Shown here one piece after another: positions 4,583 to 29,703 of a stretch of 64,000 nucleotides of DNA. The stretch is taken from positions 124,001 to 188,000 of IMG/VR virus record IMGVR_UViG_3300045051_000720. One strand, 5' to 3'. Both the position numbers and the translations under genes were made by a program. The notes below the pieces were generated by a model. The model searched no databases, had not been told where the DNA came from, and was given only the letters and a program-made list of their open reading frames with translations. How positions within the stretch are numbered: the stretch's first letter is position 1; each line of letters begins with the position of its first letter.

Positions 4583-4687
4583 GCACTCCTATACACCCAC
4601 GGCGCGCCAGTTTATGACCACCCTCGGCGCGGCGCAGGTCGACATGGGAGTGGATGATCCCGCCAAGTCCAAGGCGCAGCCACTGTG

Positions 4688-13682: not shown

Positions 13683-14458
13683 GCATACTACCGATATTCA
13701 CGTCTCACTACAGTGTCGGACATTCACTTCTCACCCTAGAGGAGCCCGGCAAGGGGAAGGCTGGCGGTCCCGTTAGTGTGTTTGACCTCGCACAAAGCGT
13801 TGGGCTGAAGGAGGTTGTGCTCGTTGACGGGAGACCTGACGGCTTTGTACAGGCCTATAAGGTGTCGACCAAGATGGGGGTCAAGCTGTGCTTCGGGATC
13901 AAGATGGTCGTTTGCGCCAACGCGGAGGACAAAAGCGATGACAGTCTCAGGTCGGAGTCGAAGGCTGTTGTGTTTGCGCGCGATACGGAGGGGTACCACA
14001 AGCTGGTGTCTGTCTGGAACCGTGCCAGCACGGCGGGTTTTTACTACTCGGCCCGCACGTCGTGGGCGTGGCTCAAGGAGCAGTGGTCGGATCATCTCTT
14101 GCTCGCTCTCCCGTGGGCATCGAGCTTCATCGCGCGCAACACGCTGACCTTTAACGCGATTGTTCCCACCCTCCCGGCCGCGCCTTGGGTGTTCAAGGAG
14201 ACTGATACGGATCTGCCCTTCGCCCGCCTCATCGACGCCGCGATAGACCGGTACGTGGCCGACACACCCGGCGCGCAGGTGGTGCCGATGAAGTCAATCT
14301 ACTACGCCCGTGATGAGGACCTGAAGCCCTACGTGGTGCTCCGTGCGATCCACAACAGGGCCACCTTCGAGAGACCCAAGGTGGACCACCTCAGCTCATG
14401 CGCTTTTTCCTTCCAACGCTGGAGGACCCTATGCCAACCCACACCCTCAACGGCGTAA
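13679..14458 (+). CDS. Stand-alone PHP domain of DNA polymerase III alpha
   Basis: FTSHYSVGHSLLTL, VVLVDG, KLCFGIKM, VVFARDTEGYHKL resemble the DnaE N-terminal PHP domain. Confidence 0.8.
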   Translation: MSILPIFTSHYSVGHSLLTLEEPGKGKAGGPVSVFDLAQSVGLKEVVLVDGRPDGFVQAYKVSTKMGVKLCFGIKMVVCANAEDKSDDSLRSESKAVVFARDTEGYHKLVSVWNRASTAGFYYSARTSWAWLKEQWSDHLLLALPWASSFIARNTLTFNAIVPTLPAAPWVFKETDTDLPFARLIDAAIDRYVADTPGAQVVPMKSIYYARDEDLKPYVVLRAIHNRATFERPKVDHLSSCAFSFQRWRTLCQPTPSTA

Positions 14459-14646
14459 CCTTTTCGCGCGACACCTTCATCACGTACTACGTGGCGGCGT
14501 GGCTGGCGTCGTGGTCTTCGCAAGTGAGGTTCACCGACCACCCCTATCTGAAACCGCACGCGTTCGTCCAGCCGGCAGATGAAGCCCTGCTATGCGCCGA
14601 GGCCGCGTGGGAGGCTCTGGTCGGGTTTCGGTCTGATGCGTCATGA
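14431..14646 (+). CDS. Hypothetical protein
   Basis: GGAGG before ATG; coupled to the next gene. Confidence 0.6.
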   Translation: MPTHTLNGVTFSRDTFITYYVAAWLASWSSQVRFTDHPYLKPHAFVQPADEALLCAEAAWEALVGFRSDAS

Positions 14647-14924
14647 CCGATTTCACTCGTGAGCCGCGCCAGTACGAAGATCCCTCTCAGCTGGTCTTCC
14701 CGCCCGAGCTACTCGCCAAGGCGATCTCAGCCAAGCCCTGTCGTCACCCCCGCACCGCGCGCCGGGTGGGTCCACGCATCCCCGCGCGTTACGGCTCATG
14801 GGCGACCGAGATGTGTTCGCGCTGCATGAGCTGGCGGTACGATCGGGGTGGATGCAAGGGCGATCGGTTCTGGCGCGGGCTGGACGAGATGGTAAGGTTG
14901 CTCCACCGCGAGGATGAGGATTGA
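14643..14924 (+). CDS. Hypothetical protein with C.H..C..C motif
   Basis: ATGA-coupled ORF. Confidence 0.6.
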   Translation: MTDFTREPRQYEDPSQLVFPPELLAKAISAKPCRHPRTARRVGPRIPARYGSWATEMCSRCMSWRYDRGGCKGDRFWRGLDEMVRLLHREDED

Positions 14925-14949
14925 CATGGGTGGTCAACGTGGCTATGAT
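14921..14949 (+). promoter_or_regulatory. Promoter with TTGAC-N7-GTCAA palindrome
   Basis: TTGACA-17-TATGAT; 6 nt later an 11-codon mini-ORF (14956-14991) ends GTGA-coupled to the exonuclease start. Confidence 0.75.
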
Positions 14950-14987
14950 GAGGTGATGACGCCCTGTGAACAGATGGAGGAGACGCA

Positions 14988-15641
14988 GTGATCGGCAGTG
15001 GTCTCACCCGCTATAGCGACGAGGTCTTTCTTTGCTGGGACACCGAGTCGTGCCATCCATCGCTTAATCTTGCTTACGCGCGCCCGTGGGAGCTGACCTA
15101 CGCTCTCGCCACGCTCAAGGGTGGGATTCAATCCATTCATACCCACCTGATCCGCTGGCCCAACATGGTGCTGACGGAGGACAATCCTTCCCTCGCCCAC
15201 TTTGATCCCGTCCGCTACGAACGCGAGGCGCGCGACCCGCGCGAGGTGTACGGAGAGTTCGGCCCGCTCCTGCGCAAGCATCGCTCGGTGTTTCACGGGG
15301 GGTTGGGGTTCGACGTGTACGTCGAGGGCGTCTGGCGGCGCGAGATCGGGCTGCGCGCCGACTATGAGTGGCTGCGCAATCCGGGGTGTCTGGACACCAA
15401 CTGCCTGTCCAAGGCGCTAAAGGGTCAGTGGACCCCCGACACCAGTTCGCCCGAGGCGTTTCTCGCGTGGCAGTATCGGGCTTATCATACCTTTCTCCCC
15501 AAAGGCACCAAGACCAAGTTGGGCGATATGTGCGTTGAGCTAGGTATCGAGTTTGATGCCAAGCAGGCGCACGGGGCCGAATATGACGTTACCCGCACGA
15601 TGGCCCTGCTCAAGGAGCTTGTGTTCAAGATCGAGGTATGA
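14988..15641 (+). CDS. DEDDh 3'-5' exonuclease (DnaQ/epsilon-like)
   Basis: WDTES, FHGGLGFD, LDT, HGAEYDV; GGAGG upstream of GTG; coupled to dnaE. Confidence 0.85.
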   Translation: MIGSGLTRYSDEVFLCWDTESCHPSLNLAYARPWELTYALATLKGGIQSIHTHLIRWPNMVLTEDNPSLAHFDPVRYEREARDPREVYGEFGPLLRKHRSVFHGGLGFDVYVEGVWRREIGLRADYEWLRNPGCLDTNCLSKALKGQWTPDTSSPEAFLAWQYRAYHTFLPKGTKTKLGDMCVELGIEFDAKQAHGAEYDVTRTMALLKELVFKIEV

Positions 15642-18184
15642 CCGCCTTCACTAGCCAGTTCACCCCGCTCGCGTTCCCCCATTTCGGGATGGTCAAGCTA
15701 CCATCCATCACGATCACACCTGAGCAGAAGGCCTCGGTCGGTCTTCCTGCCACCGCGACCAATCAAGCGTTCCTGCTCGCCTTGGCGCGGGCGGGGTATA
15801 CCAAACGGGAGGCGGTCATCCCTGTTCAGCGACGTAAAGAATATGGTGATCGGGTTAAACGCGAGCTGGCGACGTTCGAGGAGCTTGGGTTCACGGACTA
15901 CGTGTTGCTGGTCTGGCTGGTCATCAACAAGGCGCGCGAGCTGGGGGTGTTCATAGATTACGGAAGAGGCTCGTGCGCTGGGAGTTGCGTTTTTTGGCTG
16001 CTTGGCATCACGGGCGTCGATCCCATTGCCAAGCGCCTCCTCTTCGAGCGGTTCGTCTCGCGCGTGCGCTCCAAGAAACAGGTCATCGACGGCGAGACCT
16101 ACCTCCAAGGCGACCTGATTGCCGACGCCGACCTCAACCTCGGCACCGGTCTTGACCAGATCGTGGCGTGGCTGGAGACCCTCTACCCCGGCGCGGTGTG
16201 TAAGATCGTGACCCACGGCACCCTCAAGGGCAAGGTGCTCATCAACGACGTGTACAAGACCATGGAGGGGGCCTCGCAGGAGGAGTCGCAGCGCATCTCG
16301 GGGATGGTCGAAACCAAGTACGGGGTGGTTGAGGATGTGGCAGACGCCTACGAGAAACACCCCGACTTCAAGCAGTGGGCCGACAAGCACAAGGAGACCT
16401 ACGAGGTATGCCTGCGCCTGCGTGATCTGATCCGCCAGAGCGGTGTGCACGCCAGCGGCTACGTACTCTCCGCGCGCCCCTTCGATGGCTTTCTCCCCAT
16501 CCAGCTGAGCAAGGACAAGGAGATCATCTCGTGCTACGAGATGGAGGACGTGTGCAACTACGCCGTCAAGCTGGACCTACTCGGACTCATCACCAACAAG
16601 GTCGTCAAGGAGGTGATCGACGCGACGGGGGTGGACATCACCACGCTTAATCTCGACTCCGACCCGTTCATCTACGACCGTTTTCAAGATGGCAAGCTGC
16701 TCCCGTGGGGGCTATATCAGATCTCGGCGGACTGCGCATATGGCGTGACTGCCGCCATCAAGCCCAAGAACATATTCGAGCTGAGCGACGTGAACGCTAT
16801 AGCCCGCCCGGGAGCCCTAGCGTACCTCTCGGGCTACGTCGAGAACAAGGCGCAGTGCCCGCACCCGGTCTTCGAGACCATCCTCAAGCCGACGCGCTTT
16901 TATTGCTTATATCAGGAACAAATGATGCATATGGCTGTGGCTGTGGGGTTTACATTGGATGAGGCCGAGATCCTGCGCAAGATCGTGGGCAAGAAGCAGG
17001 TCGAGAAGGTCAAGGAGTGGAAGGACAAGATCTACGCGCGCGTGGCGCAGAGCAACCTGCCCGCCAATCTGGGCGACATCCTGTGGAAGATCCTTGAGGA
17101 CAGCGCGTCGTACTCGTTCAATCTGTCGCACTCCCTCTCCACGAGCTACCTGACCGCCCTCACGGTCTACCTCAAGTACCGCTACCCGAAGGAGTTCATG
17201 TGCGCGTGCTTGAACGCCGCCAAGGACATTGATGAGCGTCGTCAGATCGGGCAGGAGCTGGGCCAGTTGGGTATCAAGATCCTCCCCGCCGACATCATCA
17301 AGTCGCGCCCGCGCTTCACCATCGAGGGCGATGGTATCCGCTATGGGTTGGAAGCGGTGCGCGGCGTCAAGAGTTATGCCGACAAGCTGGGGTCGTTCAA
17401 CCGCGTGTTCGAGTCCAAGTTCACCATCTTCGAGGTTGCCAAGGCGGCCAAGATCAACATCTCGGTCCTGACCTCGCTCATCTACGCGGGTTGCCTCGAC
17501 TCCATCATCTATGATGGCTCATCCCGCGCCAAGCTCGCGCTGGAGGCCCAGCTTTACAACCTCTTGACACCCAACGAGAAGGTGCTCGCCAAACGGTATG
17601 CCGACGAGTACAAAGACGACCTGCTCGCGCTGGTGAGGGGTATCGGCGAGAAGAAGAACGAGAAGGGCAAACCGCTGATCCAGCCATCGCGCATGACGAC
17701 GCTACGTCGGGACTACGCCCCGTGTTGGGAGCAGTACACTGCCAACGCCAAGAACGAGCTGCTCACGAGCTACGTGATGGAGCGCCACCTGTTGGGCTTC
17801 TCTTACTCCGCCACGCTCCATGGGTGCTATGCGTCGCGCATACCAACCCTCATCCCCCTCAAGGACATCGCCCAACACAAGGGCACCAAGGAGGTCTTCA
17901 AGTGCGTGGCTATCGTTGAAGAGGGGAAGGTACACATCAGCCAAAAAGGTGCGCCCTATTATCGGGCAGACGTGTTTGACGACGACACCAGTGCGCGCAT
18001 CATGCTGCATGGAGCAGAAAGAGTCGAGTCGTGCAAGGGGTATAACGGCGACCTCCCCAAGGCCGGTGACATCATCACCCTCACGGGCCAGCTATCCGCG
18101 GATGGCAAGATGATCTTCGCCGATAACATCGTCGTGCAGCCCGCGCTCGTCAAACTCAAGAAGACCGACGCCCCCGAGATATGA
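15638..18184 (+). CDS. dnaE: DNA polymerase III alpha subunit (family C) lacking the PHP domain
   Basis: GRGSCAGS, ADADLN catalytic aspartates, GVHASG, KLDLLGL, ARPG, LYQEQMM, SYSFNLSHS..YLKYRYP; C-terminal OB fold. Confidence 0.93.
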   Translation: MTAFTSQFTPLAFPHFGMVKLPSITITPEQKASVGLPATATNQAFLLALARAGYTKREAVIPVQRRKEYGDRVKRELATFEELGFTDYVLLVWLVINKARELGVFIDYGRGSCAGSCVFWLLGITGVDPIAKRLLFERFVSRVRSKKQVIDGETYLQGDLIADADLNLGTGLDQIVAWLETLYPGAVCKIVTHGTLKGKVLINDVYKTMEGASQEESQRISGMVETKYGVVEDVADAYEKHPDFKQWADKHKETYEVCLRLRDLIRQSGVHASGYVLSARPFDGFLPIQLSKDKEIISCYEMEDVCNYAVKLDLLGLITNKVVKEVIDATGVDITTLNLDSDPFIYDRFQDGKLLPWGLYQISADCAYGVTAAIKPKNIFELSDVNAIARPGALAYLSGYVENKAQCPHPVFETILKPTRFYCLYQEQMMHMAVAVGFTLDEAEILRKIVGKKQVEKVKEWKDKIYARVAQSNLPANLGDILWKILEDSASYSFNLSHSLSTSYLTALTVYLKYRYPKEFMCACLNAAKDIDERRQIGQELGQLGIKILPADIIKSRPRFTIEGDGIRYGLEAVRGVKSYADKLGSFNRVFESKFTIFEVAKAAKINISVLTSLIYAGCLDSIIYDGSSRAKLALEAQLYNLLTPNEKVLAKRYADEYKDDLLALVRGIGEKKNEKGKPLIQPSRMTTLRRDYAPCWEQYTANAKNELLTSYVMERHLLGFSYSATLHGCYASRIPTLIPLKDIAQHKGTKEVFKCVAIVEEGKVHISQKGAPYYRADVFDDDTSARIMLHGAERVESCKGYNGDLPKAGDIITLTGQLSADGKMIFADNIVVQPALVKLKKTDAPEI

Positions 18185-19976
18185 CCCGTCCCACCTTCGT
18201 CACCTGTCAAGACCGCCTCACCCAACTGGTCGCCGAGGACCAGCCCGAGGACTACCTCTTTGACGAGCAACCCATTCGGGTAGGCAACGCCAAGCTGACC
18301 TCCTTCCTCGTTCACTACACCACGCGCGGCGGCGCACCCCGCGAGGCGCGGCTGGTGTTCGGCGGCGATCAGAGGCTGCTCTTCGCCTTCGTCATCGACC
18401 CCGGGATGTGTGGCCACGCGCTAGAGGAAGGCTTCGACGCGCAGAAGGCGGACGAACTGGCCACATTGCGCGTGGACGGGTTGGACGCGGTTGTGGGGTA
18501 CCTGAAGGGACTTGACACGCGCGGCTAACGCGGCTATGATGAGCACATGACCTTCCATCATCCCGTGATCACTCCCGACGCCGACGAGGCGGATGAAAAG
18601 CATTGGCGGCGCACGGCTGTCGGTGAGCAGATCAAATCAGCGTGGCAGGCCTATATCCTGCTTCCCCAACCTCACTGGCGCATCAGTGCCTTCTACACCT
18701 CGGACCGTGAGGTCGTATCCGGGCGTACGTCTTACAGGGCACCAAACAGCCTCAAAGCATGGTGCTCGGTTCTGCCTGAGCTAACGCGCAAGTGGGTGCG
18801 GCGATGGAGGGGGTTGGCGTGAAAAAGCGGGACATCGACACCCTTGTGGGGTATGCCATCCATGACTGGTGGCAGGTTGGTGACTACAGTCTATGTTTAC
18901 GTACCACCGGCCCGTCTGGCGGTGAGGCACATTGGGACATCCAGTTGGACGATGATGGTGGGGGCACCGGCAACGCCAGCCACGCTTATTTTGGCGACAT
19001 TCGTCTAAACGACCTGCTCGGTCACACCATCACCGCCGCGCGCCACGAGGACGAATCGTCCTATGGTGTGCTGTTGATCCTTGAGGCCGGCGATAAACGG
19101 GGGTGTATCCCCATCGTCCACGACCACAACGGGTACTATGGCTTCAGCTATGAGGTCGTGCCTTTCGTGCCATGAAGCAGTACTGCATTGTCTATGACCT
19201 CGACGGCGAGGCTTATGTCATACCCGCCACCAAGCGCAAGGCATGGGACACCTTCTTGGCTATTCCTGTGGACGACGAGCGCAAGGTACCCAAGTGGGCC
19301 GAGCGCATAGATAGCCCACTCTCAATCACCTTGACACGATGACTACCCACGAGTTCGCCCGTTCTCTCCTCGCGCTGCCTGACCTGCCGGTCTTCCATTT
19401 TGATCCCTCCCTCGCCGGGCTGGACGAGGAGATTGATCACTCACTCACCGAGCCCGTGGCCGAGGTGTGTCGCCCTGACCGCTGGGACAAGCGATGGAAG
19501 CCCTTCGTGACCATCAGCTCGGTCGAGGACCGTACGGAAGAGGCGGATGGCATCGACGCGATGCGCGACGACCGCCAGCGGCTCGATTGGGTGTTGGCCA
19601 TCCTCGCCACGCGCGGTACGGATGGGTTGAGAGACATCATCCCGTGGGAACCACCCTGCCCACCTGACCGCGATAGTCTCGACATCGCGATGGGGCGGTG
19701 TCCGACCCCCTAATGGCCGTCGTCGCCGACTTCATCTGCTCGGTGTGTCAGACCAAAAGGCACGAGCTGGTCGTGTGGGGCGAGTACGGCACGGTGTGTG
19801 CGGTCTGTCGGACTGAGCAGGTCAAGGCCGAGTCCTCCGCTAAACGCATGACCCTCAAGGGGTTGACGGCGTTGACGGTTGAGGAGAGGTTGGCGAGGCT
19901 AGAGGCGGAACTGTATGACCTCCCCGCGCTGCGGCGGCGAATCGAGGGTTTGGAAGCGGGTCAGGCTCGGTACTGA
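18181..19976 (+). other. Run of small hypothetical CDSs
   Basis: 18181-18528, 18547-18822 (promoter TTGACA-17-TATGAT at 18512-18540), 18819-19175, 19172-19342, 19339-19713, 19713-19976; all coupled by overlaps. Confidence 0.75.
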
Positions 19977-20019
19977 CGCATCACCCCATCGTGATGCGAC
20001 GATGGGTGTATATCCTCTT

Positions 20020-20790
20020 GGCCACGCGCTCTAGTAGGCGGCGGTGGAGTGTTACCGAGGCGGGAGACATCGAGCTACCGCCAAGTCTACCCCTATAATC
20101 CCCGCCGCGCTGGGTGTATAGTGGACGACGGACTAACACCCGCCGCGAGACACGTGTGTGATAACGCGATACTCGCTATGCCCAATCTCGATGCCGGAAG
20201 TCCCGGAGTGTCGGGCGCAGTTCGACGATGTTCGCAGCGCATATCAATAGACTGTCGGGGTAGCTCCCCTTCACCGCTCGCGACCAGACGGCTTGCTGAA
20301 AGGCAAGTGGCGTTCCTCGGATGACCCTCGCGCGGCTCTGACACGACTGACCTGTCCAGTGATGGATGGGCGAAACGGCTGGTTCGGGCAGTCCTGACTC
20401 GCGCATGGTCTAGTAGGTCGTCCCTGAAGCACCATGCTCACCTCGTCGCCCGGTTAACGGTCACGCTTGTCTTTCGTATCGGCAGGCAGCCACCGCACCC
20501 CAGTTGGGTTTCAAGCCCCTAGAGAGAGGTCGCTGGATGGAAAGGGCGATGTTGCGCCTCACGGTGCAGATGCTGCGGTAGATGTCGGCTAAACCGTTCC
20601 CCGGTCCCGCTTTGCTACGTTGGTCTCCTAGTCTCACCCCTTTTGGGGGTGGTGTCTTTTCCGACCCTAGGACCCAATGTAGCCATCCAGCGCGCCCTTA
20701 CGGGCGAGCAGGGAAGAGGGCTTCCCGTTCAGGGTCTGCCGACCCCTACCCAGCCCCTCAAACCCCAAAGCGGGAGGGTTAAGGCTAGGT
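20020..20790 (+). ncRNA. Candidate large structured non-coding RNA
   Basis: No credible ORF in about 860 nt. Many stems: CTTGCT-GAAA-GGCAAG, CACCCC-TTTT-GGGGGTG, CGCCC-TTAC-GGGCG, GGGAAG-AGGG-CTTCCC, and long-range CGCTGGATGG/CCATCCAGCG. Ends and strand are inferred. Confidence 0.6.
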
Positions 20791-20800
20791 GTGTCCACAC

Positions 20801-20829
20801 TTGACTCTCTCGGTCAACCCGCCTACCCT
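20801..20829 (+). promoter_or_regulatory. Promoter with TTGAC-N7-GTCAA palindrome
   Basis: TTGACT-17-TACCCT, 7 nt before ATG 20837. Confidence 0.75.
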
Positions 20830-20836
20830 AGGGTCT

Positions 20837-21430
20837 ATGGCTAAGGCTCCCGAGACAAGCGTGTGCGTGTTCAGTGACGAGAACCCGCCGCGGTACCGAT
20901 ACCTCCTAGACCACACCGTCGATGACACGGTCCCGAGCTACGCTCGAAAAACGGTCATCTTTATTCTCGCCAACCCCTCGGTCGCCAATCAGACCCAGCT
21001 AGACCGCACTCTGCGCCGCGCGCGAGGCTTCACCAAACGGTTAGGGGGTCATCATATGGCCATCCTCAACGCCTTCGCTTTCGTCAGCCAAGACCCGGCG
21101 GGAATGCTCAACGCAGATGACCCGGTCGGCCCGCTCAACGACCAGATCATCGCCAAGACCATCGCGCGCGAGGGGGTCCTTCATGTCATCTGCGGGTGGG
21201 GTCATCTGGGTACGCACCGTGGGCGCGACAAGGAGCTGATGGCGATGCTGCCGGGGCAGCTGTCCTGTTTGGGGCTGACCAAGGGTGGACAGCCTCGACA
21301 CCCCCTCTATCTCAAGGCCGACGCTCCTCTCCTGCCCTTTGGGTACGTGGTCAATCCGAGCTTGACATCACCATCCAACTCCGGTACGGTGAGCGCATGT
21401 CCTCCTCCCCCGACCTCATCCTCTGGGTGA
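20837..21430 (+). CDS. DUF1643 family protein
   Basis: RYRYLL, FILANPSVA..D.T, ILNAFAF..DP, GWG, TKGGQPRHPLY. Confidence 0.85.
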   Translation: MAKAPETSVCVFSDENPPRYRYLLDHTVDDTVPSYARKTVIFILANPSVANQTQLDRTLRRARGFTKRLGGHHMAILNAFAFVSQDPAGMLNADDPVGPLNDQIIAKTIAREGVLHVICGWGHLGTHRGRDKELMAMLPGQLSCLGLTKGGQPRHPLYLKADAPLLPFGYVVNPSLTSPSNSGTVSACPPPPTSSSG

Positions 21431-21492
21431 TCGTGGCGGTGGTGGTGGCGATTGTCATCTTCATCATCGACCAGATGGACCCGTTCGAATGA
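21397..21492 (+). CDS. Small single-TM protein, leaderless
   Basis: TTGACA-17-TACGGT (21362-21390) then 6 nt to ATG; coupled to the AAA gene. Confidence 0.6.
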   Translation: MSSSPDLILWVIVAVVVAIVIFIIDQMDPFE

Positions 21493-23000
21493 TCCCTGAT
21501 CTATCTCTCACCTCATGGGCCGGCATCGCCGCCGCTGGTGCCTTCATCGCCTCGGGATGGCGCACCATCCTTGCGGGATGCCGATGGGTATCCGACCTCA
21601 TCATCTGCCGCGTGATGCTCAAGGACGACACCGCGCGCGCGGTGATGGCGTATGCGTGGTCGAAGGGCAAGCGCAACCCGTTTGGGCTGAGGATGTTTGG
21701 CGGGTTGACTACGTTCGTCGCGCCCAAGCGAAGGGTTGAGGTTGTGGGTTACGAGAGTGTGACCAGCGAACCGGTGCTTTTCTGGATGGGTCGCGTGCCC
21801 ATGCTCATCAGTTGGGGTATGACCTGCAAGGAGCACGATCGGCTCAACGTGGGCAATCAGATCGGTGGGCCGGCGATGCCTACCACCCTGCGGTTCCTTC
21901 GCGGCACGTTGAATGTCGAGACTTTTATCGAGGCGGCCATCACCGCCTACAACCAGAAGCGACAGATGACTGACGACGCAACGCGCCGTCCCAAGCGGTT
22001 CAACGTCATCCGCATGACCGGCCCGGTGCGGGGCGAACACGAGTTGTCGATGAAAGGGTCGGGCTCTGAGAGCCCCAATAGCATCAGTGGTACCGCTTCC
22101 GATTTCCTCATTCAACTCCAGCGCGGTGAGATGCGCACGTTGACGTGGAAGCCCGAGGATTTGGTCGAACTGGGGTCGAGCGAGAAGCCCTTCACGCATC
22201 ACCCGGTCGCCCCCGACATCATGGCGGCGTTCGATGACATCGGGGGATGGCTCAAGCACGAGAACTGGTTTCGCTCGCGGGGTGTGCCGTGGAGACGGGG
22301 ATTCCTGATCCACTCGCCGCCCGGCGCGGGAAAGGACACGTTGATTCGCAACCTCGCCATCCAGCACGACCTTCCCATCTACGCCTTCGACCTGTCCACC
22401 TACGACAACCGCTCGTTCCCCGATGCGTACCGTGCGGTGATGCAGAACGCGCCCGCCATCGCGCTAATCAGTGACATCGACGCCGTGTTCAAGGGGCGCG
22501 AGAACGTCGCGGTCAAGGACAAGCAGCGCGAGGGGTTGACCTTCGACTGTTTGCTCAATACCCTCAGCGGCATCACCACGTCGGAGGGGGTCCTCCTGTT
22601 CATCACGACCAATCACATCGAGAGCCTCGATCCTGCACTCGGCCAACCGCGCAATGGGGATCATAAGTCCACTCGGCCCGGCCGCATCGACAAGGTGATT
22701 GAGATGGGCGCGATGCAGGAGCGCGAGCGGCGCTTGTTGGCCCAGCATGTGCTGAGTGACTGGCCCGACCAGATTGAGCCCACTGTCGTGGCGGGCGAGG
22801 GCGAGATGGCTGCCCAGTTCCAAGAGCGGTGCGCGCAGGTCGCGCTCAAGGCGTATTGGGAGAGGGGGCTGACCAGCGAGGTTGTACCTGTGGCGGCACG
22901 AGCGGTTGATGAATCGGCGCGACGCGAGGACGATAGTAAATGGGCAGATGAACAGGCGTTGATGCGCGCGCGACGTTTTATGCAAGCGAAATCCTTATGA
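21489..23000 (+). CDS. BCS1-like membrane-anchored AAA+ ATPase
   Basis: N-terminal TM segment; GVPWRRGFLIHSPPGAGK, ISDIDAVF, LTFDCLLNTLSG, FITTNHIESLDPAL, RPGRIDK. Confidence 0.85.
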   Translation: MIPDLSLTSWAGIAAAGAFIASGWRTILAGCRWVSDLIICRVMLKDDTARAVMAYAWSKGKRNPFGLRMFGGLTTFVAPKRRVEVVGYESVTSEPVLFWMGRVPMLISWGMTCKEHDRLNVGNQIGGPAMPTTLRFLRGTLNVETFIEAAITAYNQKRQMTDDATRRPKRFNVIRMTGPVRGEHELSMKGSGSESPNSISGTASDFLIQLQRGEMRTLTWKPEDLVELGSSEKPFTHHPVAPDIMAAFDDIGGWLKHENWFRSRGVPWRRGFLIHSPPGAGKDTLIRNLAIQHDLPIYAFDLSTYDNRSFPDAYRAVMQNAPAIALISDIDAVFKGRENVAVKDKQREGLTFDCLLNTLSGITTSEGVLLFITTNHIESLDPALGQPRNGDHKSTRPGRIDKVIEMGAMQERERRLLAQHVLSDWPDQIEPTVVAGEGEMAAQFQERCAQVALKAYWERGLTSEVVPVAARAVDESARREDDSKWADEQALMRARRFMQAKSL

Positions 23001-25148
23001 GCATCCACCTCACCCCCGAGGAACAGACGACCTTGACGATTGCCCTCGCCCTCGAAAATGAGGGCTTCACCTCCGCCGCGCAGTGGCTGCGCAATCAGAT
23101 TGCCGCGCTGAGGGGCATCAAATGGGATCAACCACCGCACCCGGGTGGGTGGGAGGCCGTGTTTCGCACTCATCGGGGAAGCTTACCACCAGTGGTGACC
23201 CCAACCCCAACCGCGCATCAACCGGCCATTCTGCCGGACCAGATTGTCGGCGCGCCGTTTGACGAGACCTTATGACCGTCGAGACCACAGACTACACTCC
23301 CGAGGGTAAGACCCTCTCCGATTGCTCTCCCGCCGAGTTGATGCACACTGTCCTTGCCATTCGTCAGCACGGTATGCTCCGGATGCACGCCGCCGAACGG
23401 TTGATGAACCGTATCAACGACGAGCTGGAGTCGCGCAAGCTGGGGTTATTCACCTACGAGGACAACGGCACCGATCCCGATGACAAGGGGATGGTGCACG
23501 CCATCGGGCCGCTTCAAGACACGTTACGCACCGACGACCATCATCACGTCATCCTCATCCGCAACGTGGACCGTCAGTACCGGGTCCTGACCGTCAATGG
23601 TCCGTTCTCCAAGGTGCGCGCCGAGGTGCGGGCATTTTGCGATGCGCCGTCTCGTCATCCCAAGGTCGAGCCCCTCGATTTGAGCAAAGGCCCTGTGGTC
23701 TTGCCCAGCGGGACTATCGTCGGGATGGTTGACCCATTTATTCCATGACCCTCACCGACCAAGACCTTGACAACCTCCTCGCCATCCTCGCTGAGCGAGA
23801 ACGACTCAAAGCGTTGACCAACCGCGCGCTGGTGTTGGAGGTGTTAGGCCACCCAGCCGCCGACGATCCAGTGGTGATCGAGCTGATGAACCGGGTGCTC
23901 CCCGGTTGGGAGCACGGCTTTACAGAGGAGGAGACTGAGTCATGATCCCCACCACCCTAGACGAGGCCGTCGATCAGATCATCGCCTCGATGTCCGAGGC
24001 CGCCAAGGCGGGCTGGCGTGCCTCCAAAGACGGGTATGCTGCGCGTCTGCATCGCGGCTTTGGTACCGCCCTCCGCAATGACTGGGGCCTCTGGTACAAC
24101 AAGACCCCCATTGCGCGGTGGTTCCAGTCATATGGGGTGCTCCATGCGGACGACCGCTCGGGGATCATCCTCGACGCCGTACACGCGCGCCTGAAGGGCC
24201 TCCCCTTCTCCATTGACGAACAGGCGGTCTACTACAAGGCGTGGTGGGCCAAGCGGGGGATGAACGCGGATGGCAGCCCGCGGACGGCGGTGAGGCGTCT
24301 GTTTGTCAAGAAGGACGGGTCGGTTACCGAGGACCCATCATGACCGACCACGTGTGCCGTCAACCGCAGACCTGCACCTGCTCCATTCAGGCCTTGGAGC
24401 CCGACGAGCAGTGTCCTATCCACGGCGCGGGCGAGTGGCCGCCGAGATGTGAGATCTGCGGACGGTTGATGCCATGGCCCAAGGAGGCCGAACCCCATGA
24501 CGACTGACGTATGGACCCCCTATGCCCAACAGGGCCACGGCAAGGGCCATTCTCCCGTACCTGAGGCCGGGTTCTACGGAGCGTTGCTCATAGGCACGTG
24601 CCTGCTCGCGTGGGTGTTGCGCAAGATCCGGCGATGAGCTTTTTACCCAATCCTGTTCCATCGAAAGGGAGGTCTCGCTACCCTCGCTGGACCCTGCGTG
24701 ACGGCACCAAGGTGAGGGTCGAAGATATGAGCGACGCTCACGTCAAACGCGCGATAGTCTACCTCGAACGCAAGGCCCAAGAGCGGTGGCCCGATTTTGT
24801 GCGCGAGTGCAACGCGGCGATTGGGTGTTGGGATGAGCAGATGGGCGGGACGACGGGTGTTGAAGACGCCCTAGAGGACGCAAACGGATGGACCGTCTGT
24901 CTCCACCCCATGCACGAGCATCTGGTCGCCGAGGCTGAGCGGCGCGGGTTGGAGGTGGAGCGATGATCCCCACTGACATCCTCCGTACTGCCGATATCCT
25001 CCGTACCATGGCGGCACGCCGTCCCGACTATCCCGTTTACACGGTATGGAACGCGCTGGTCATCTATATCCCCGAGGACCAGTGGATGAGTGCGGTGGAG
25101 CGTTATGCCGATGCGCTGGTGCCGGACTGGAGGACCCTATGCGACTAG
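22997..25148 (+). other. Run of small hypothetical CDSs
   Basis: 22997-23275, 23272-23748, 23745-23945, 23942-24343, 24340-24507, 24497-24637, 24634-24966, 24963-25148. Confidence 0.75.
23942..24343 (+). CDS. DUF6794-like protein
   Basis: TLDEA, HRGFGTALRNDWGLW, WF..YGVLHADDRSGIIL; family recalled from memory. Confidence 0.6.
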   Translation: MIPTTLDEAVDQIIASMSEAAKAGWRASKDGYAARLHRGFGTALRNDWGLWYNKTPIARWFQSYGVLHADDRSGIILDAVHARLKGLPFSIDEQAVYYKAWWAKRGMNADGSPRTAVRRLFVKKDGSVTEDPS

Positions 25149-25516
25149 CTATCATCGGGTTGCGCACCGCGACTGACTATGCCATCCTTGATGGGGTTAT
25201 GGCACGCCATTTTACCGCCCCGATGGGCAAACAAGACGATACGGTCGAGACCATCGTGACCGAGGTGATCAGCGGCGGGGCCGCAGGAGCAGACACCCTT
25301 GGCGCTCGCTGGGCTACTGAGCGCCAGATCAAGTTGACGGTGTTCAAGCCCGACTGGAACCGCTTCGGCAAGCGTGCGGGGTTCGTGCGCAACGAGGACA
25401 TCGTCGCGGCGGCGGATGTCGTGCTGGCGATTTGGGATGGCTCGTCAAAGGGCACCCAGAACAGCCTCTCTATCGCCAAGCGTCTCAAGAAGCCCACTAT
25501 CATCATCTACTCATGA
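25139..25516 (+). CDS. SLOG-family (YspA/DUF2493-like) protein
   Basis: LAIIG, ISGGAAGADTLGARWA, PDW..GKRAGFVRNEDIV, AIWDGSSKGT. Confidence 0.88.
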   Translation: MRLAIIGLRTATDYAILDGVMARHFTAPMGKQDDTVETIVTEVISGGAAGADTLGARWATERQIKLTVFKPDWNRFGKRAGFVRNEDIVAAADVVLAIWDGSSKGTQNSLSIAKRLKKPTIIIYS

Positions 25517-25570
25517 AACTCCCTTCCCATATCCTCAAGCAGGTCAAGTGGTTCGAGCATGGCACTATCC

Positions 25571-26812
25571 TCATTTGACGTGAGTCAAACGCTGACATTC
25601 CCGCTTCACAGGCCCCACAGTCGGGGCCTCCCCGGGCGTATCTTTCCGGCGTGCCTGCCGGTAGTTTTCGGCCAGCAAGCTGGTCGAAGAAGTGTCTTGC
25701 GTACGAAACGCCATAGCGCGGATATTCCGCGCGGCGTTGACATCACGGTCGTGGGTTATACCACAGACGCATGTCCAGTTTCGGTCGGCGAGAGTCAAAT
25801 CGCGCTTGATGTGACCGCATTCGGAGCACGTCTTGGACGACGGCTCGAAGCGACCTATCACGCGGACATTGACGCCATACCACCTAGCCTTGTACTCGAT
25901 CTGACGGCGCAGTTCGCGCCATCCTGCGTCCTGAATCGACCTGTTCAGGGCTCGCCCGCGACGAGATGTCGTGAGCATATCCGACACCGACAGATCCTCG
26001 ATGCACAGCGTGGTGGCGTGGCTCTTGCGCACCAGATAGCTGGACACCTTATGGAGGTTGTCGTTGCGGATGAAAGAGATACGTTCGTGGGTCAAGGCTA
26101 CACGTTGCCGCGCCTTGTTCCGATTCGCCGAGCCCTTGACCTTGCGCGACAGGCGGCGTTGTCGAATCTGAAGGCGGCGCAGGTACCGCTTCAACGCGCG
26201 CGGGTTCTCGAACCGTTGACCATCGCTCGTCACGATCAAATCCTTGAGACCAAAGTCAAGACCAAGAGCATGGTTCTCCTCGGCGAGTGGCGGCGTAGGC
26301 TCTGTCAACCCATCCTCAACCAAGATCGAGACGTAGATCTTGCCCGTTGCAACGCGCGAGACGGTGGTAGTCTTGATCTCACCGTCAAAACGGCGGTTGA
26401 AGCACCCCTTGAGGCCCTCACGGAAGCCGATCAGACTCACACGCTGAGTGCCGAAGTCAACTTTGGTCTTCTGAGGCAGCTGAAAGGAGTCATGTTGACC
26501 TTTGGCCTTGAAACGCGGGAACGAGGCTTGCCGATTGAAAAAACGCGTAAAGGCGGCATCAAGGTTGCGCAATGCCGATTGCAGAGCTGCCGCGGGTACC
26601 TCCTCCAACCACTGCGTTTCTTCTCTCTCTTTCAACTCGGGCAGATGTGCCTGAAGCTCGTAAAGCGATACACTCACCCCCGCCTCCATATATCGCGCCG
26701 TTTTCTCGGCGAGAGCCCAGTTGTAAATCCAGCGGACGCAACCAAACACCTTAGCCAGTTTAACTTGCTGGTCGGGGGTGGGGTAGATACGGTAGCGGTA
26801 TGCTTTGAGCAC
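25571..26812 (-). CDS. tnpB: TnpB RNA-guided endonuclease (IS200/IS605 family)
   Basis: KAYRYRIYP..FGCVRWIYN; RuvC GLDFGLKD, IEDL, RDVNAARNI; CSEC/CVC zinc finger; GTG start. Confidence 0.95.
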   Translation of the reverse strand: MLKAYRYRIYPTPDQQVKLAKVFGCVRWIYNWALAEKTARYMEAGVSVSLYELQAHLPELKEREETQWLEEVPAAALQSALRNLDAAFTRFFNRQASFPRFKAKGQHDSFQLPQKTKVDFGTQRVSLIGFREGLKGCFNRRFDGEIKTTTVSRVATGKIYVSILVEDGLTEPTPPLAEENHALGLDFGLKDLIVTSDGQRFENPRALKRYLRRLQIRQRRLSRKVKGSANRNKARQRVALTHERISFIRNDNLHKVSSYLVRKSHATTLCIEDLSVSDMLTTSRRGRALNRSIQDAGWRELRRQIEYKARWYGVNVRVIGRFEPSSKTCSECGHIKRDLTLADRNWTCVCGITHDRDVNAARNIRAMAFRTQDTSSTSLLAENYRQARRKDTPGEAPTVGPVKRECQRLTHVK

Positions 26813-26846
26813 GCTACGCTATACACCGAGCGTAACAGTGGCGATG
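25580..26846 (-). mobile_element. Solo-tnpB IS200/IS605 (IS1341-like) element
   Basis: Right end ends in TCAC after a GGCCCC/GGGGCC hairpin; TTTAC lies just outside the inferred left end; no tnpA; removing it joins the flanks in frame. Confidence 0.6.
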
Positions 26847-26948
26847 GTAAAGGGATTGTAAAACGTATTGTTGAGCTGCTCGCCCAGCTCAAGACCCAAT
26901 GCCCCGAACAGGCTTGACAGTCCGATTCAACTCCCCTAGACTGCTCCT

Positions 26949-29374
26949 ATGACCAATCGCGTTTGCCGCCGCCTTCGCAAGCTTTTGAATCTCCCTAGGG
27001 TCCCGAAGACCATGGGGACGGTTGACAGGCTGGCGTATAGAAACCTCAAGGCCAGATTCAAACGGTTGCCGGCACCCGCGCGCGCCATTTTCTTAGCCAA
27101 CCTCAAAACCCTCCAAGCATGAACCCCCAACCCAACCCCGAGATCGTCGAGGCCGTCGAGCAGATCGTCTCTACCATCGACATCATCGCGCTCAATCCGC
27201 GCATGTGGTATTCACTTGCCAAGGTTTATCGTACGGCGCTAGATGCCCTCGTGGCTGAAGGCTTCGCCCGCGAAGAGGCCATCACCATCCTGAGCCGCCA
27301 AGGGGCGGTGAAAGGCTGATATGACCGTCGCCGCCCTAATCAAGGCCCTCCAGAAGCAGGACCCCAAGGCCCACGTGATCCTGTCCAGCGATCCCGAGGG
27401 TAACCACCACTCGCCTCTCTACTCCGCCACTCCCGCCGTATGGGACGGCGAAGACCTCCGTCTGCGCGAATGGACGGATGACGATGTCTGCCTTGATCCT
27501 GACACGTGGAAGGCGATGAAGAGAGACCCCAAGATGCGCGCTATCCTTCTATCCCCCGAATCATGATCCTCGAAGACGCTATTGCCACCCTCATCGAATC
27601 TGCCCGCGAGCACGGTCTCCCTTCGGAGACCACTAATGCGTTGGTTGCTGACCTCCGCAAGGCTGCCAAGGAGGAGGCCGCATCTCGCGATAAGGTTTCC
27701 GCCCCCAAGACGCGCCTTGTGGCATTTCTGCGCTCATCTGATCCGGTCGTCATCCGCGCGGCCGAAGCCGGGGTATTTATTGCCTCGGTTCCTGACGACG
27801 CCTCTACCGCAACCTATAGCGGACAGAGTCTTCTTGGCCGCCTGCGTTCCGCCATCACCGCTCATAACGACGCACCCAAGGGCAAGCGCAAGGCCAAGGT
27901 GGTTATCCAGACGTGGCAGCAAGCCTTCGCGCATCTTCGCCCAAAGACCATCAAAGCCTCAGGCAGTGTGATCGGCATCAAGCAGAAGGGTACCCCCGCC
28001 GAGGTCGTGGTCCTGACCAAAGAGGAGGTCAAATGAGCGCGCTTGGTCGCATGTTTTTTATTCTCATCGGCACAGCATACATATCAGTGTTCGTGGGGGC
28101 TTCGTGGGTCCCAATGTGGGTTGCCGTTGTTTGGGGCACGATTCTCGGTCTTGCGGCAGAACCCCTCGCCAAATGGGTAAGGGAGGGCGCATGACCCCCG
28201 AGCGTAAGGCCGCATCGCGGTTGGGTTGGTTGCCGATTCTCGGCGCGATGTGGATCATCGTGTTCGTCTGCATCGTACCACCGATCTGGTATGTGTCTCT
28301 GCCTATCGCCCTTGTTTGCGGGATGATTCTAACCCATTACGAACCGGCGCTTTACCGCTGGGTCACCGCGCCCGAACGGGAGGTCAAATGAGCCCTACAT
28401 CTCTGGTCCCCGTTGCCAAGCAAGACGCCCTGCGCGCCGCCGAGGTGATGCTGAAAGACGTAGACAAGCGCCGTGCGGCAGAACGCACCAAAACGATCCA
28501 CGGGGTTCTTGACACACGCCGTGTGCGTACCGGCTGGTTCAAGACCCGTCCCATCACGCCCGACGAGGCTGAGCGGCTTGTTGACCAGCCCCACGACATC
28601 TTCGATGACGATTGGCGCCTTGGTCTGTGGCGTCTTGAGTACGAAGGCAACAAAACCCTTGCAGAACGCCTTCAGGCCGCCGTTCAGCTCACCTGCGACG
28701 GTACCATCTGGCTCAACCTAGAGGAGGCGGCGGTGGTGCAGTCCTTTCTATGAACACCTACCCGATCATCGACGTAGACTGGGTCAGCATGGTCGAACCC
28801 CTCACGCCCGGCTGGGACGTGTGGGAGGTGGATGCTGTGCTAGACACGGGCGACACCATCCATGGGACCATCATTGGCGACGGGGTCAACTCGTTCGACA
28901 TCGAGTCGTTCACGCCGGATGAGTAACCCCTATCCTCATCTGATCCGCGAGTACGCGGTCATTGACGAGATGGAGTACGACCGCCTCGGTAAGGCAGGTG
29001 TCCGTAAGCTCATGGCGGATGTAGAGGCAAAAGCCCGCGCGGTGGCCAAGCGGGTTGGCATCAAGCGCATCAAGGTTCGCGCCAAGAGGTGGGACTTGGA
29101 TGTGCTCTGCGGATTCACCGACTACCCCATGTACCTCTGCGGACCCGATGCGCCGCGCATCGAGACCGCGGCCGATGTGTTCAAGCACGTTTGGCATCTC
29201 AACAACCCTCGCGCGCGCTATGAGTGTGTGCTGGAGGACAAGGCCCTGTTCGACCAGAAGCGGCGTGAGTGGCTTGATGGGTTGGTAGCGCAGGCGCGCG
29301 CTGAGGGTATTGACTCCCTGCGTGAAACGTGGGCTCCCAACGTGATCGCTATGGTCAAGCGAAGGATGCGATGA
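26949..29374 (+). other. Run of small hypothetical CDSs, including two small TM proteins
   Basis: Promoter TTGACA-17-TAGACT at 26914-26942; ORFs 26949-27122, 27119-27319, 27321-27566, 27563-28036, 28033-28194 (TM), 28191-28391 (TM), 28388-28753, 28750-28926, 28919-29374. Confidence 0.75.
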
Positions 29375-29703
29375 ACCCCCTTCTCATCTGCTACCTCCTC
29401 GCCGTCCACTGGGTGGCGGATTTCGTGCTCCAGACCGACGAGATGGCGTTGAAAAAATCGACCTCCAACCGTTGGCTCACGGACCATGTGGCGGTCTATA
29501 CCTGTGCCCTAGCCTTCCTCACGCTCTCGCCGTGGTTCGCGCTTATCAATGGGTTTCTCCACTGGGGCACCGACTACGTCACCTCGCGCTGGACGACGCG
29601 GCTGTGGAAGGCCGAGCGGCGGCATGACTTTTTCGTCGCGATCGGTGTGGACCAGTTGGTTCACACCACTACGCTTGTGTTGACTGCCTATTGGTTTCTA
29701 TGA
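29371..29703 (+). CDS. DUF3307 family membrane protein
   Basis: HWVADFVLQT, L..HVAVY, LHWGTD, IGVDQLVH. Confidence 0.88.
   Translation: MNPLLICYLLAVHWVADFVLQTDEMALKKSTSNRWLTDHVAVYTCALAFLTLSPWFALINGFLHWGTDYVTSRWTTRLWKAERRHDFFVAIGVDQLVHTTTLVLTAYWFL

What the first reader, a model, noticed from the sequence alone, without database searches (positions are those of the whole stretch)
20020..20790. About 770-nt ORF-free, ornately structured region: candidate giant phage ncRNA
This is the largest coding gap in an otherwise packed window. It holds a GAAA-capped stem (20292-20307), hairpins at 20635-51, 20693-706 and 20711-26, and GGCGG/CCGCC (20037/20078). Two long-range helices cross each other as in a pseudoknot: 20531-40 with 20683-92 (10 bp) and 20584-89 with 20738-43. 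CTAGTAGG occurs twice (20031, 20410) and resembles loop-E AGUA strands. Size and complexity recall GOLLD and ROOL RNAs of phages. I see no RNase P, tmRNA, or group I/II intron signatures. A replication origin is the alternative.
Basis: partly seen in the sequence, partly recalled or inferred. Interest (0 to 1): 0.72.

Follow-up and report, generated by a model that had tools for sequence, protein, structure and literature searches.

The report
Non-coding promoter-to-terminator unit in jumbo phage
The 860-base gap is truly non-coding and probably yields a roughly 0.5-kb untranslated RNA from one of the phage's own promoters, but it is not a giant ornately folded RNA like GOLLD or ROOL, and syntenic relatives lack it.

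Summary
The window comes from a 219-kb uncultivated jumbo phage from a rhizosphere metagenome. The gap spans 19977-20836, between a 92-aa zinc-ribbon-like gene and a DUF1643 gene, just downstream of a DnaE-type polymerase.

It is non-coding:
- No frame shows a codon signal.
- No frame hits a protein family or finds a homologue.
- A variant from another metagenome carries three 1-nt deletions.

It is not "ornately structured". The body 20127-20662 folds no better than shuffles (z = +1.5). Only 20525-20760 stands out (z = -3.3). The long-range "pseudoknot" helices and the CTAGTAGG repeat are at chance level. Rfam gives nothing.

What the gap does contain:
- Two copies of a genome-wide bipartite promoter motif (ATAAW-N12-GGGTGTATA), at 20004 and 20095-20121.
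- About 500 nt of untranslated sequence.
- The best terminator-like hairpin of the neighbourhood (20634-20652).
- A conserved host-type leaderless promoter for DUF1643 (20801-20829).

Four syntenic relatives lack the gap. Fragments from two other metagenomes carry it at 93-100% identity, better conserved than the flanking genes. Their changes preserve two small hairpins.

Best reading: a lineage-specific, promoter-to-terminator non-coding transcription unit. Transcription is inferred, not shown. Interest is moderate.

The parts
19698..19976 (+). Upstream 92-aa gene with paired CxxC motifs and a coiled-coil tail. It forms the left border of the gap.
   Evidence: The codon score is positive. It has no Pfam or PHROG family. 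Its 3' end is co-linear with the gap in the X3 contig at about 91% identity.
19977..20006 (+). Two overlapping 8-bp hairpins directly after the stop codon. They look like a terminator but have no T tract.
   Evidence: (I15, I16). The local z is about -2.
20004..20013 (+). Promoter-motif copy P1 (GGGTGTATAT), without the upstream ATAAW box.
20034..20090 (+).
   Evidence: For 19970-20125 the z is only -1.5.
20095..20121 (+). Promoter P2, a full bipartite motif: ATAAT, then 12 nt, then GGGTGTATAG. The predicted start is near 20128.
   Evidence: It is one of 7 full copies in the genome, against 0.04 expected. GGTGTATA occurs 26 times against 4.1 expected. 18 of the 26 copies lie 0-67 nt upstream of a same-strand start codon. 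The X3 contig is identical from 19988 to its end at 20117, i.e. through P1 and all but the last 4 nt of P2.
20128..20633 (+). Untranslated body of the predicted transcript, with neither a coding signal nor excess folding.
20292..20307 (+). Hairpin H1: a 5-bp stem with a GAAA loop closed by a U.G pair.
   Evidence: In the X4 variant 20294 T>A and 20305 A>T swap U-A for A-U, while the loop changes.
20351..20370 (+). Hairpin H2: an 8-bp stem including G.U and U.G pairs, with a GUGA loop.
   Evidence: In the X4 variant deletions of 20353 and 20367 plus G20354C replace the two wobble pairs with one C-G. This gives a perfect 7-bp stem with the same loop.
20525..20760 (+). The only clearly structured segment. 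It holds an extended hairpin 20614-20682 with a terminator-like apex, then hairpins at 20693-20706 and 20711-20726.
   Evidence: z = -3.26, with 0 of 200 shuffles folding as well. 150-nt windows give z about -3.3 on both strands.
20634..20662 (+). Intrinsic-terminator-like hairpin (8 pairs, 5 of them G-C) followed by TGTCTTTTCC. This is the predicted 3' end of the P2 transcript.
   Evidence: It is the top-ranked such site in 10001-30000.
20801..20829 (+). Host-type promoter of the DUF1643 gene: TTGACT, 17 nt, TACCCT, then 7 nt to the ATG at 20837 (leaderless).
   Evidence: The four relatives that lack the gap have TTGACA at the same offset from the ATG, though the -10 hexamer is a clear TAnnnT only in the window and L005. 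An analogous TTGACA-17-TATGAT sits 6 nt before the ATG at 18547.
20837..21430 (+). DUF1643 gene, the right border of the gap.
   Evidence: Pfam PF07799 at 1.4e-29. The start codon aligns with those of the relatives.

Best explanation
The gap is a lineage-specific, non-coding intergenic module in a hypervariable stretch of the phage's replication-gene cluster. Read 5' to 3', I propose it works as follows.
1. Hairpins at 19977-20006 end the upstream operon.
2. Two copies of the phage's own promoter class follow. The second, P2 (20095-20121), is a full consensus copy and fires rightward from about 20128.
3. RNA polymerase makes an untranslated RNA of about 530 nt. It is mostly unstructured apart from a few small conserved hairpins (H1 and H2).
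4. Transcription stops in the hairpin cluster 20614-20726, whose first hairpin (20634-20652) carries a T tract. This insulates the next gene.
5. The DUF1643 gene is expressed separately, as a leaderless mRNA from its own conserved host-type promoter (20801-20829).

Shown: the non-coding status, the promoter motif and its genome-wide behaviour, the terminator-like structure, the absence from relatives, the high conservation in two other metagenomic variants, and the hairpin-preserving changes.

Inferred: that P2 is active, that the RNA ends at 20660, and that the RNA itself is the selected product (a regulatory or decoy RNA whose hairpins are protein- or RNA-binding modules).

The general claim, a non-coding module of transcription signals, I put at about 0.75. 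The specific claim, that it makes a functional stand-alone ncRNA, I put at about 0.4.
For: Non-coding:
- Codon log-odds are below 0 in all six frames across 19940-20830, while the flanking genes score +0.2 to +0.4.
- The ten longest stop-to-stop frames have no Pfam or PHROG hit at E <= 1.
- ORF 20049-20324 has no homologue among 5.8 billion protein clusters.
- ORF 20582-20782 has only one low-complexity hit among 1.8 billion representatives.
- No frame opens under single-stop read-through.
- The X4 variant has three 1-nt deletions, and no frame is preserved in it.

Promoter:
- GGTGTATA occurs 26 times against 4.1 expected.
- 18 copies sit 0-67 nt before a same-strand start codon, and two lie upstream of the tRNA array.
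- 7 copies carry ATAAW at a fixed 12-nt offset, against 0.04 expected, and P2 is one of them.

Terminator.

Separate DUF1643 promoter: TTGACA/T lies at a fixed offset from the ATG in the window and in four relatives.

Constraint:
- The X3 contig has 12 listed differences in the 135 coding nt before the stop codon, but only 1 in the first 141 nt of the gap.
- The X4 contigs match 20246-20417, 20408-20558 and 20767-20845 at 93%, 99% and 96%. No X4 contig matches the roughly 2.1 kb of flanking genes at 80% or more.
- 9 of the 12 changes in 20246-20417 fall in hairpins H1 and H2 and keep both helices.
Against: - There is no transcript evidence. No RNA run could be listed.
- The body is less stable than shuffles (z = +1.49). 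This is not what a structure-dependent RNA would show.
- The region is missing from four syntenic relatives, so it is dispensable for the phage type.
- No homologue was found beyond near-identical fragments, so a real covariation test was impossible.
- The comparative evidence rests on a few 151-286-nt low-depth contigs.
- High identity relative to the flanks can also come from recent recombination (phage mosaicism).
- Coordinated changes in hairpins can arise by template switching in quasi-palindromes, without selection.
- The MFE-retention test of the X4 variant is only suggestive (P = 0.085).
Confidence: 0.42

Rival explanations
1. Evolutionary debris. The gap would be the remains of a promoter-bearing gene cassette (a moron or homing-endonuclease-type insertion) whose ORF has decayed. 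Only the promoters and terminators would still act, and the sequence between them would have no function.
For: - The gap lies in a hypervariable slot where relatives carry zero to four unrelated small genes.
- One relative carries an HNH gene in that slot.
- The same promoter motif precedes genes of atypical composition elsewhere in the genome, one with a GIY-YIG-like motif.
- The body has neither coding nor structural signal.
- The X4 variant differs by single-base deletions.
Against: - No frame retains any family similarity at E <= 1 or any similarity to the relatives' genes.
- GC content equals the genome average, unlike the low-GC endonuclease-like genes.
- The sequence is 93-100% identical in variants whose flanking genes are more diverged. 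Neutral debris could show this only after very recent transfer.
- Changes cluster in two hairpins and preserve them.
Confidence: 0.25
2. A cis-acting leader or insulator. P1 and P2 would add a second, phage-timed input to the DUF1643-AAA operon. The hairpin cluster would act as an attenuator or antitermination target, and the RNA would have no role in trans.
For: - The promoters point toward DUF1643 with no gene in between.
- The structured, terminator-like cluster lies just before the DUF1643 promoter.
Against: - DUF1643 has its own conserved promoter and a leaderless start in all five genomes.
- A 710-nt leader with no evident ribosome-binding site before the ATG would be a poor template for translation (read from the sequence).
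- Relatives express the same operon without this region.
Confidence: 0.12
3. A replication origin, possibly transcription-activated: a promoter plus downstream DNA structure, as at the T4 and T7 origins (from general knowledge).
For: - It lies in the replication-gene cluster, 1.8 kb downstream of the DnaE-type polymerase.
- It contains promoters and hairpins that are equally stable on both strands.
- The cumulative GC-skew maximum is at genome position 141,052, about 3 kb upstream, on a plateau that includes the gap.
Against: - There are no iterons and no repeats above chance.
- There is no AT-rich unwinding tract; GC is 0.59-0.62 throughout.
- The skew signal is weak and broad, and it is a maximum rather than a minimum.
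- The adjacent AAA protein resembles BCS1 and p97 unfoldases, not initiators.
- The region is absent from syntenic relatives, which would then need another origin.
Confidence: 0.07
4. One or more small proteins. Candidates are the 67-aa GTG ORF that starts directly after P2 (20121-20324), the 58-aa minus-strand ORF 20461-20637, and a 14-aa ORF at 20536 preceded by a GAGAGG box.
For: - GTG follows P2 at +0, as at some other copies of the motif.
- Both X4 substitutions in 20408-20558 are synonymous in the minus-strand ORF.
Against: - Codon scores are negative.
- No homologues were found.
- The C-terminus of the 67-aa ORF is not preserved in X4.
- No promoter motif occurs on the minus strand.
- Two synonymous changes in one of six frames is within chance.
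Confidence: 0.06
5. One reading: a giant, ornately folded RNA in the manner of GOLLD or ROOL, spanning most of the 770-860 nt.
For: - The size is similar, it lies in a phage, and it is non-coding.
- The whole-gap z is -2.1 on the + strand.
- Several GNRA-type loops can be read from the sequence.
- Two hairpins are kept through compensatory changes.
Against: - No covariance-model match.
- The body has z = +1.49.
- The long-range helices are at chance level.
- It is not next to tRNAs.
- There is no family of homologues.
Confidence: 0.05

Closest known systems
GOLLD and ROOL large ornate RNAs of phages and prophages (bioRxiv 10.1101/2024.12.08.627333; PMC5737381)
   Same: It is a non-coding region of several hundred nucleotides inside a phage genome.
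   Different: There is no match to any Rfam model. There is no excess folding over most of its length. It is not adjacent to tRNA genes. No homologue family exists on which conserved architecture could be shown.
Stand-alone phage non-coding transcription units, meaning a promoter-to-terminator small or medium RNA in an intergenic region (for example lambda OOP, from general knowledge)
   Same: It has its own promoter and a terminator-like hairpin, no ORF, and lies between operons.
   Different: At about 530 nt it is much longer than typical phage sRNAs. No antisense target was found in the phage genome; one search found only the promoter repeat. Transcription is not demonstrated.
Morons and mosaic cassettes of phage genomes, meaning promoter- and terminator-flanked insertions between conserved genes (from general knowledge)
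   Same: Its distribution among syntenic relatives is patchy. It is flanked by its own promoter and terminator. It sits in a hypervariable slot, and it is more similar between phages than its flanks are.
   Different: A moron carries a protein gene, and here no ORF is credible.
Transcription-activated phage origins, namely the T4 ori(uvsY)/ori(34) and the T7 primary origin (from general knowledge)
   Same: A phage promoter followed by non-coding DNA, located in the replication-gene region.
   Different: There is no AT-rich unwinding element and there are no iterons. It is absent from relatives.

Membership tests
GOLLD / ROOL / OLE / raiA / HEARO and other Rfam large RNAs | A match to the family covariance model at or near the gathering score | tested here: not met
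   There were 0 matches at gathering thresholds over the whole window and over the rest of the genome apart from tRNAs. At E <= 10 over 19900-20900 the best match is Fibro-purF at 20.7 bits, against a gathering score of 60.
GOLLD / ROOL | Extensive conserved secondary structure across most of the RNA | tested here: not met
   The body 20127-20662 has z = +1.49. Only 20525-20760 is structured. The long-range helices are at chance level.
GOLLD / ROOL | Typical genomic context next to tRNA genes in phages or prophages (from general knowledge) | tested here: not met
   There are no tRNAs in the window. The 14-tRNA array is at genome 70.5-75.6 kb, about 70 kb away.
Structured ncRNA in general | Statistically supported covariation in an alignment of diverged homologues | tested here: inconclusive
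   Only one partial variant (X4) is diverged enough to test. Two hairpins are kept by compensatory changes. No further homologues were found.
Stand-alone non-coding transcription unit | Its own promoter, a terminator, and no ORF in between | tested here: met
   P2 is one of 7 full consensus copies. There is a terminator-like hairpin at 20634-20662. No coding signal was found. All three are sequence predictions.
Stand-alone non-coding transcription unit | A detected transcript with defined ends | not testable with these tools
   No RNA run could be listed. The phage is known only from metagenomes.
RNase P, tmRNA, tRNA, group I/II introns | A model match | tested here: not met
Phage replication origin | Iterons or repeated initiator-binding sites, plus an AT-rich unwinding element | tested here: not met
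   Repeats are at chance level. GC is 0.59-0.62 across the gap.
Phage replication origin | A strand-composition switch at the site | tested here: inconclusive
   The cumulative GC-skew maximum is at genome 141,052, which is 3 kb upstream, on a broad low-amplitude plateau.
Protein-coding gene or pseudogene | Codon bias, homologues, or a frame preserved between variants | tested here: not met

The most novel reading that the evidence does not exclude
The gap would be a mobile, self-promoted non-coding RNA cassette that moves between otherwise divergent jumbo phages of soil and water. It would be kept at 93-100% identity because the RNA itself serves the phage, for example as a decoy or sponge against a host defence, or as a partner of the co-linear zinc-ribbon protein. 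That would be a new class of phage ncRNA with no relative in Rfam.
Probability: 0.15. Interest if true: 0.65.

Novelty: new member of a known kind. Interest (0 to 1): 0.35.

Why it matters
If the predicted RNA is real and functional, it would be an accessory ncRNA of an uncultivated jumbo-phage lineage that has no cultured or catalogued relatives. It would also be an example of a non-coding cassette exchanged between phages.

The more solid by-products are regulatory:
- The phage has a clear bipartite promoter class of its own, ATAAW-N12-GGGTGTATA.
- It also has a host-type TTGACA-17-TAnnnT class that drives leaderless genes.

Together these give a first transcription map for this genome and a hint about its host. 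As it stands, the finding is a well-delimited candidate, not a discovery. It lacks transcript evidence and a homologue set.

Tried and rejected
- **Annotated phage records.** Similarity searches, both near and distant, found no match.
- **Relatives via flanking proteins in IMG/VR.** The DUF1643 protein, the 92-aa protein and DnaE all found none.
- **Homologues of the 92-aa protein.** None.
- **The gap itself, sought with pseudo-protein patterns.**
  - IMG/VR: none.
  - JGI metagenomes: the first scan found none. The second gave one hit, L007, which proved spurious. It has no DNA similarity, and tblastx gave only that one 27-residue match in the gap plus a scatter of equally short matches elsewhere.
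  - GTDB genomes: none.
- **Exact 22-mer from the most conserved stretch.** No match in IMG/VR or in the GTDB genome contigs.
- **The genome search 'relatives'.** Not available for a virus record.
- **Exact look-ups of two gap ORFs as called genes.** Not on record.
- **RNA sequencing runs.** None was listed.
- **Alternative genetic codes.** No frame opens under read-through of any single stop codon, and the 14 tRNAs include no suppressor. Rejected.
- **Terminal inverted repeats of a MITE-like element** (CTAGTAGGCGG at 20031 against CCGCCTAC...CTAG at 20819). Rejected. It is at chance level, and the right arm overlaps the DUF1643 promoter; L003, which lacks the gap, has a similar CTACCCTG between TTGACA and its ATG.
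- **GC-rich 10-12-mers repeated across the genome** (for example ACCCGCCGCG). These are ordinary coding-sequence words.
- **CRISPR-repeat mimicry by the hairpins.** No CRISPR-DR model matched at E <= 10, and the host is unknown.
- **Literature on DUF1643.** Uninformative.

Full report
**Context.** The window is bases 124,001-188,000 of a 219,464-bp IMG/VR virus contig with 59% GC, estimated to be 96% complete. The only run holding nearly all of the queried stretch 19700-21100 is a rhizosphere metagenome. Genes around the finding lie on the + strand:
- a split DnaE-type polymerase, with its PHP domain at 13679-14458 and its core at 15638-18184;
- six small ORFs;
- the gap;
- a DUF1643 gene at 20837-21430 (Pfam E = 1.4e-29);
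- an AAA ATPase at 21489-23000, whose closest solved relatives are BCS1 and p97-type unfoldases.

**The observation.** The ORF-free stretch is 19977-20836, or 860 nt. A codon-usage log-odds score trained on the phage's own long genes is negative in all six frames from about 19940 to 20830. The flanking genes score +0.2 to +0.4 per codon. A crude genome-wide gene call makes this the largest uncalled stretch of the window, and the other large stretches all contain ORFs of at least 145 aa.

Against dinucleotide shuffles, long-range inverted repeats of 8-10 nt give P about 0.08-0.10, and direct repeats give P = 0.17-0.34. Neither is above chance. Short hairpins are moderately enriched, with 6 stems of at least 6 bp against 1.6 expected, P = 0.017.

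Folding results:
- The whole gap gives z = -2.1 on the + strand and -1.1 on the - strand.
- The signal is local. 150-nt windows are unremarkable from 20100 to 20550 (z from -0.6 to +1.4). They are strong only at 20550-20750 (z about -3.3 on both strands) and mild at 19950-20100.
- The putative transcript body 20127-20662 folds worse than 94 of 100 shuffles (z = +1.49).
- The segment 20525-20760 beats all 200 shuffles (z = -3.26).

So "ornately structured" and "pseudoknot" are not supported. A structured 3' segment and a handful of hairpins are.

**Not a known RNA and not a protein.**
- Rfam gives no match at gathering thresholds anywhere in the genome apart from tRNAs. It gives nothing meaningful at E <= 10 in the region. 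ARAGORN finds nothing in the window.
- The ten longest stop-to-stop frames have no Pfam or PHROG hit at E <= 1.
- The 91-aa ORF has no homologue in 5.8 billion protein clusters. The 66-aa ORF gets only a low-complexity hit at E = 1.9e-4.
- No frame resembles the small proteins of related contigs.
- Reading through any one stop codon does not open a frame, and the phage's 14 tRNAs include no suppressor.

**What the gap does contain.** The 8-mer GGTGTATA, usually as gGGTGTATAGc, occurs 26 times in the genome against 4.1 expected. In the window, 8 near-matches occur against 1.5 expected.
- Eighteen copies lie 0-67 nt upstream of a same-strand start codon, often exactly 7 nt upstream, which implies leaderless or near-leaderless mRNAs.
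- Two more copies lie upstream of the minus-strand array of 14 tRNAs.
- Seven copies carry ATAAW exactly 12 nt upstream, against 0.04 expected.

This is a bipartite promoter class specific to this phage. The inference rests on position and orientation, not on transcript data.

Two copies lie in the gap. P1 (20004-20013) lacks the upstream box. P2 (20095-20121) is a perfect full copy. Neither is followed by a credible ORF.

About 510 nt downstream lies the best terminator-like hairpin of the surrounding 20 kb, at 20634-20652 followed by TGTCTTTTCC. It forms the apex of an extended hairpin at 20614-20682, and two more G+C-rich hairpins follow.

Finally, TTGACT-17 nt-TACCCT-7 nt-ATG precedes the DUF1643 gene. 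The four related contigs have TTGACA at the same offset from their ATG, with a clear TAnnnT hexamer only in the window and L005. A perfect TTGACA-17-TATGAT sits 6 nt before the ATG at 18547. DUF1643 therefore has its own host-type, leaderless promoter and does not need the gap.

**Comparative evidence.** Four metagenomic contigs share the gene order DnaE, small genes, DUF1643, AAA. Their DUF1643 proteins are 64-75% identical to the window's. In all four the DUF1643 gene follows the preceding small gene after 31-54 nt. None contains anything similar to the gap.

The slot between the homologue of the 91-aa gene (18547) and DUF1643 holds zero, one or four unrelated small genes in three of these relatives. 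The fourth contig, L005, begins too close to DUF1643 to show the slot. The gap is thus lineage-specific and lies in a hypervariable slot.

Short assembled contigs from other metagenomes do carry it:
- **Second rhizosphere sample (X2).** Identical sequence.
- **Aquatic sample (X3).** One contig spans 19842-20117. It has 12 listed differences in the 135 coding nt and only one (19987, in a hairpin loop) in the first 141 nt of the gap.
- **Drinking-water sample (X4).** Contigs cover 20246-20417 (9 substitutions and three 1-nt deletions), 20408-20558 (2 substitutions) and 20767-20845 (3 differences). After the last of these, the DUF1643 coding sequence becomes unalignable, and no X4 contig matches the roughly 2.1 kb of flanking genes at 80% or more.

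The gap is therefore better conserved than its flanks at both borders. Either selection or recent modular exchange could explain this.

Nine of the 12 changes in 20246-20417 fall in two small hairpins and preserve both:
- In H1 (20292-20307) a U-A pair becomes A-U, while the GAAA loop is replaced.
- In H2 (20351-20370, GUGA loop) two deletions, one on each arm, plus G20354C replace adjacent G.U and U.G pairs with a single C-G. The result is a perfect 7-bp stem.

A randomisation test that places the same mutations at random gives P = 0.085 for retaining the folding energy. That is suggestive only. The G.U pairs make these helices specific to the + strand, which is the strand the promoters transcribe.

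No further homologues could be found in IMG/VR, JGI metagenomes, GTDB genomes or annotated phages. A proper covariation test was therefore not possible. No RNA run could be listed.

**Interpretation.** The best-supported model is a non-coding module of transcription signals that encloses one untranslated transcription unit:
1. Upstream-operon terminator hairpins.
2. P1 and P2.
3. An RNA of about 530 nt with a few conserved hairpins.
4. A terminator and insulator cluster.
5. The independent leaderless promoter of DUF1643.

Termination before DUF1643 makes functional sense. A leaderless gene read from a 710-nt leader with no evident ribosome-binding site would be poorly translated (inference). 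I put the module-of-signals claim at about 0.75. I put the claim that the RNA itself is a selected, trans-acting product at about 0.4.

The rivals, in order:
1. Debris of a decayed promoter-bearing cassette (0.25). The hypervariable slot and the featureless body favour it. The conservation pattern, the hairpin-preserving changes and the lack of any protein remnant count against it.
2. A cis leader or attenuator for the DUF1643-AAA operon (0.12).
3. A transcription-activated origin (0.07). There are no iterons and no AT-rich tract, the AAA protein is not an initiator, and the GC-skew maximum is broad and 3 kb away.
4. Small proteins (0.06).

**Comparison with known systems.** The region fails every tested defining feature of GOLLD, ROOL and the other large Rfam RNAs: model match, pervasive structure and tRNA context. 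It works most like a stand-alone phage non-coding transcription unit, or like a moron-type cassette without a protein. It is a new member of that broad, known kind.

**Verdict.** The region is non-coding and probably transcribed, but it is not giant-ornate. Interest is 0.35. The most novel reading not excluded is a mobile, self-promoted ncRNA cassette shared among divergent jumbo phages, with probability about 0.15.

Noticed in passing
Window 4589-4615 (-), 12695-12704 (+), 20004-20013 (+), 20095-20121 (+), 26819-26828 (-), and 21 further copies in the genome: A phage-specific bipartite promoter-like motif, ATAAW-N12-GGGTGTATA(G). The core 8-mer occurs 26 times against 4.1 expected. It usually lies 0-67 nt, often exactly 7 nt, before a same-strand start codon, which implies many leaderless or near-leaderless genes.
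   Followed up: yes
Window 18512-18540, 20801-20829, 14921-14949, 26914-26942; also L003-L006 upstream of DUF1643: A second, host-type promoter class, TTGACA-17-TAnnnT. It sits 6-7 nt before ATG start codons (leaderless). The TTGACA box upstream of DUF1643 is conserved in four related contigs. The leaderless design may hint at the host group.
   Followed up: partly
Window 13679-18184: The DnaE-type polymerase appears split. A PHP-domain ORF lies at 13679-14458. Two ORFs without a family follow, at 14643-14924 and 14988-15641. The polymerase core lies at 15638-18184 and matches the PHROG profile only from position 324. Whether the intervening ORFs are mobile insertions was not examined.
   Followed up: no
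Genome 70,578-75,572 (outside the window; locus L011): An array of 14 tRNA genes lies inside a tract of about 6 kb without called genes. Thirteen are on the minus strand. Two copies of the promoter motif lie 2-3 kb upstream.
   Followed up: partly
Genome 20,420 (+) and 38,588 (-) (outside the window): Here the promoter motif precedes genes of atypical codon usage. One is a 262-aa protein with CxxC pairs. The other is a 277-aa protein with a GIY-YIG-like motif. They are possibly homing endonucleases carrying the phage's own promoter.
   Followed up: no
Genome 208,900-210,795 (outside the window; locus L016): Another 1.9-kb tract without a called gene contains a copy of the motif at 209,767 (+). 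No start codon with an ORF of at least 25 aa occurs within 90 nt of it. Rfam finds nothing there.
   Followed up: no
Genome-wide, with the maximum at genome 141,052 (window 17,052): Cumulative GC skew rises from about 72 kb to about 141 kb and then falls to about 217 kb, although nearly all genes from 76 to 212 kb are on the + strand. The switch is therefore not explained by gene orientation.
   Followed up: partly
Window 19698-19976: The 92-aa gene bordering the gap has two CxxC pairs (zinc-ribbon-like) and a coiled-coil tail. It has no homologue in the protein collection. It is co-linear with the gap in the X3 variant.
   Followed up: partly
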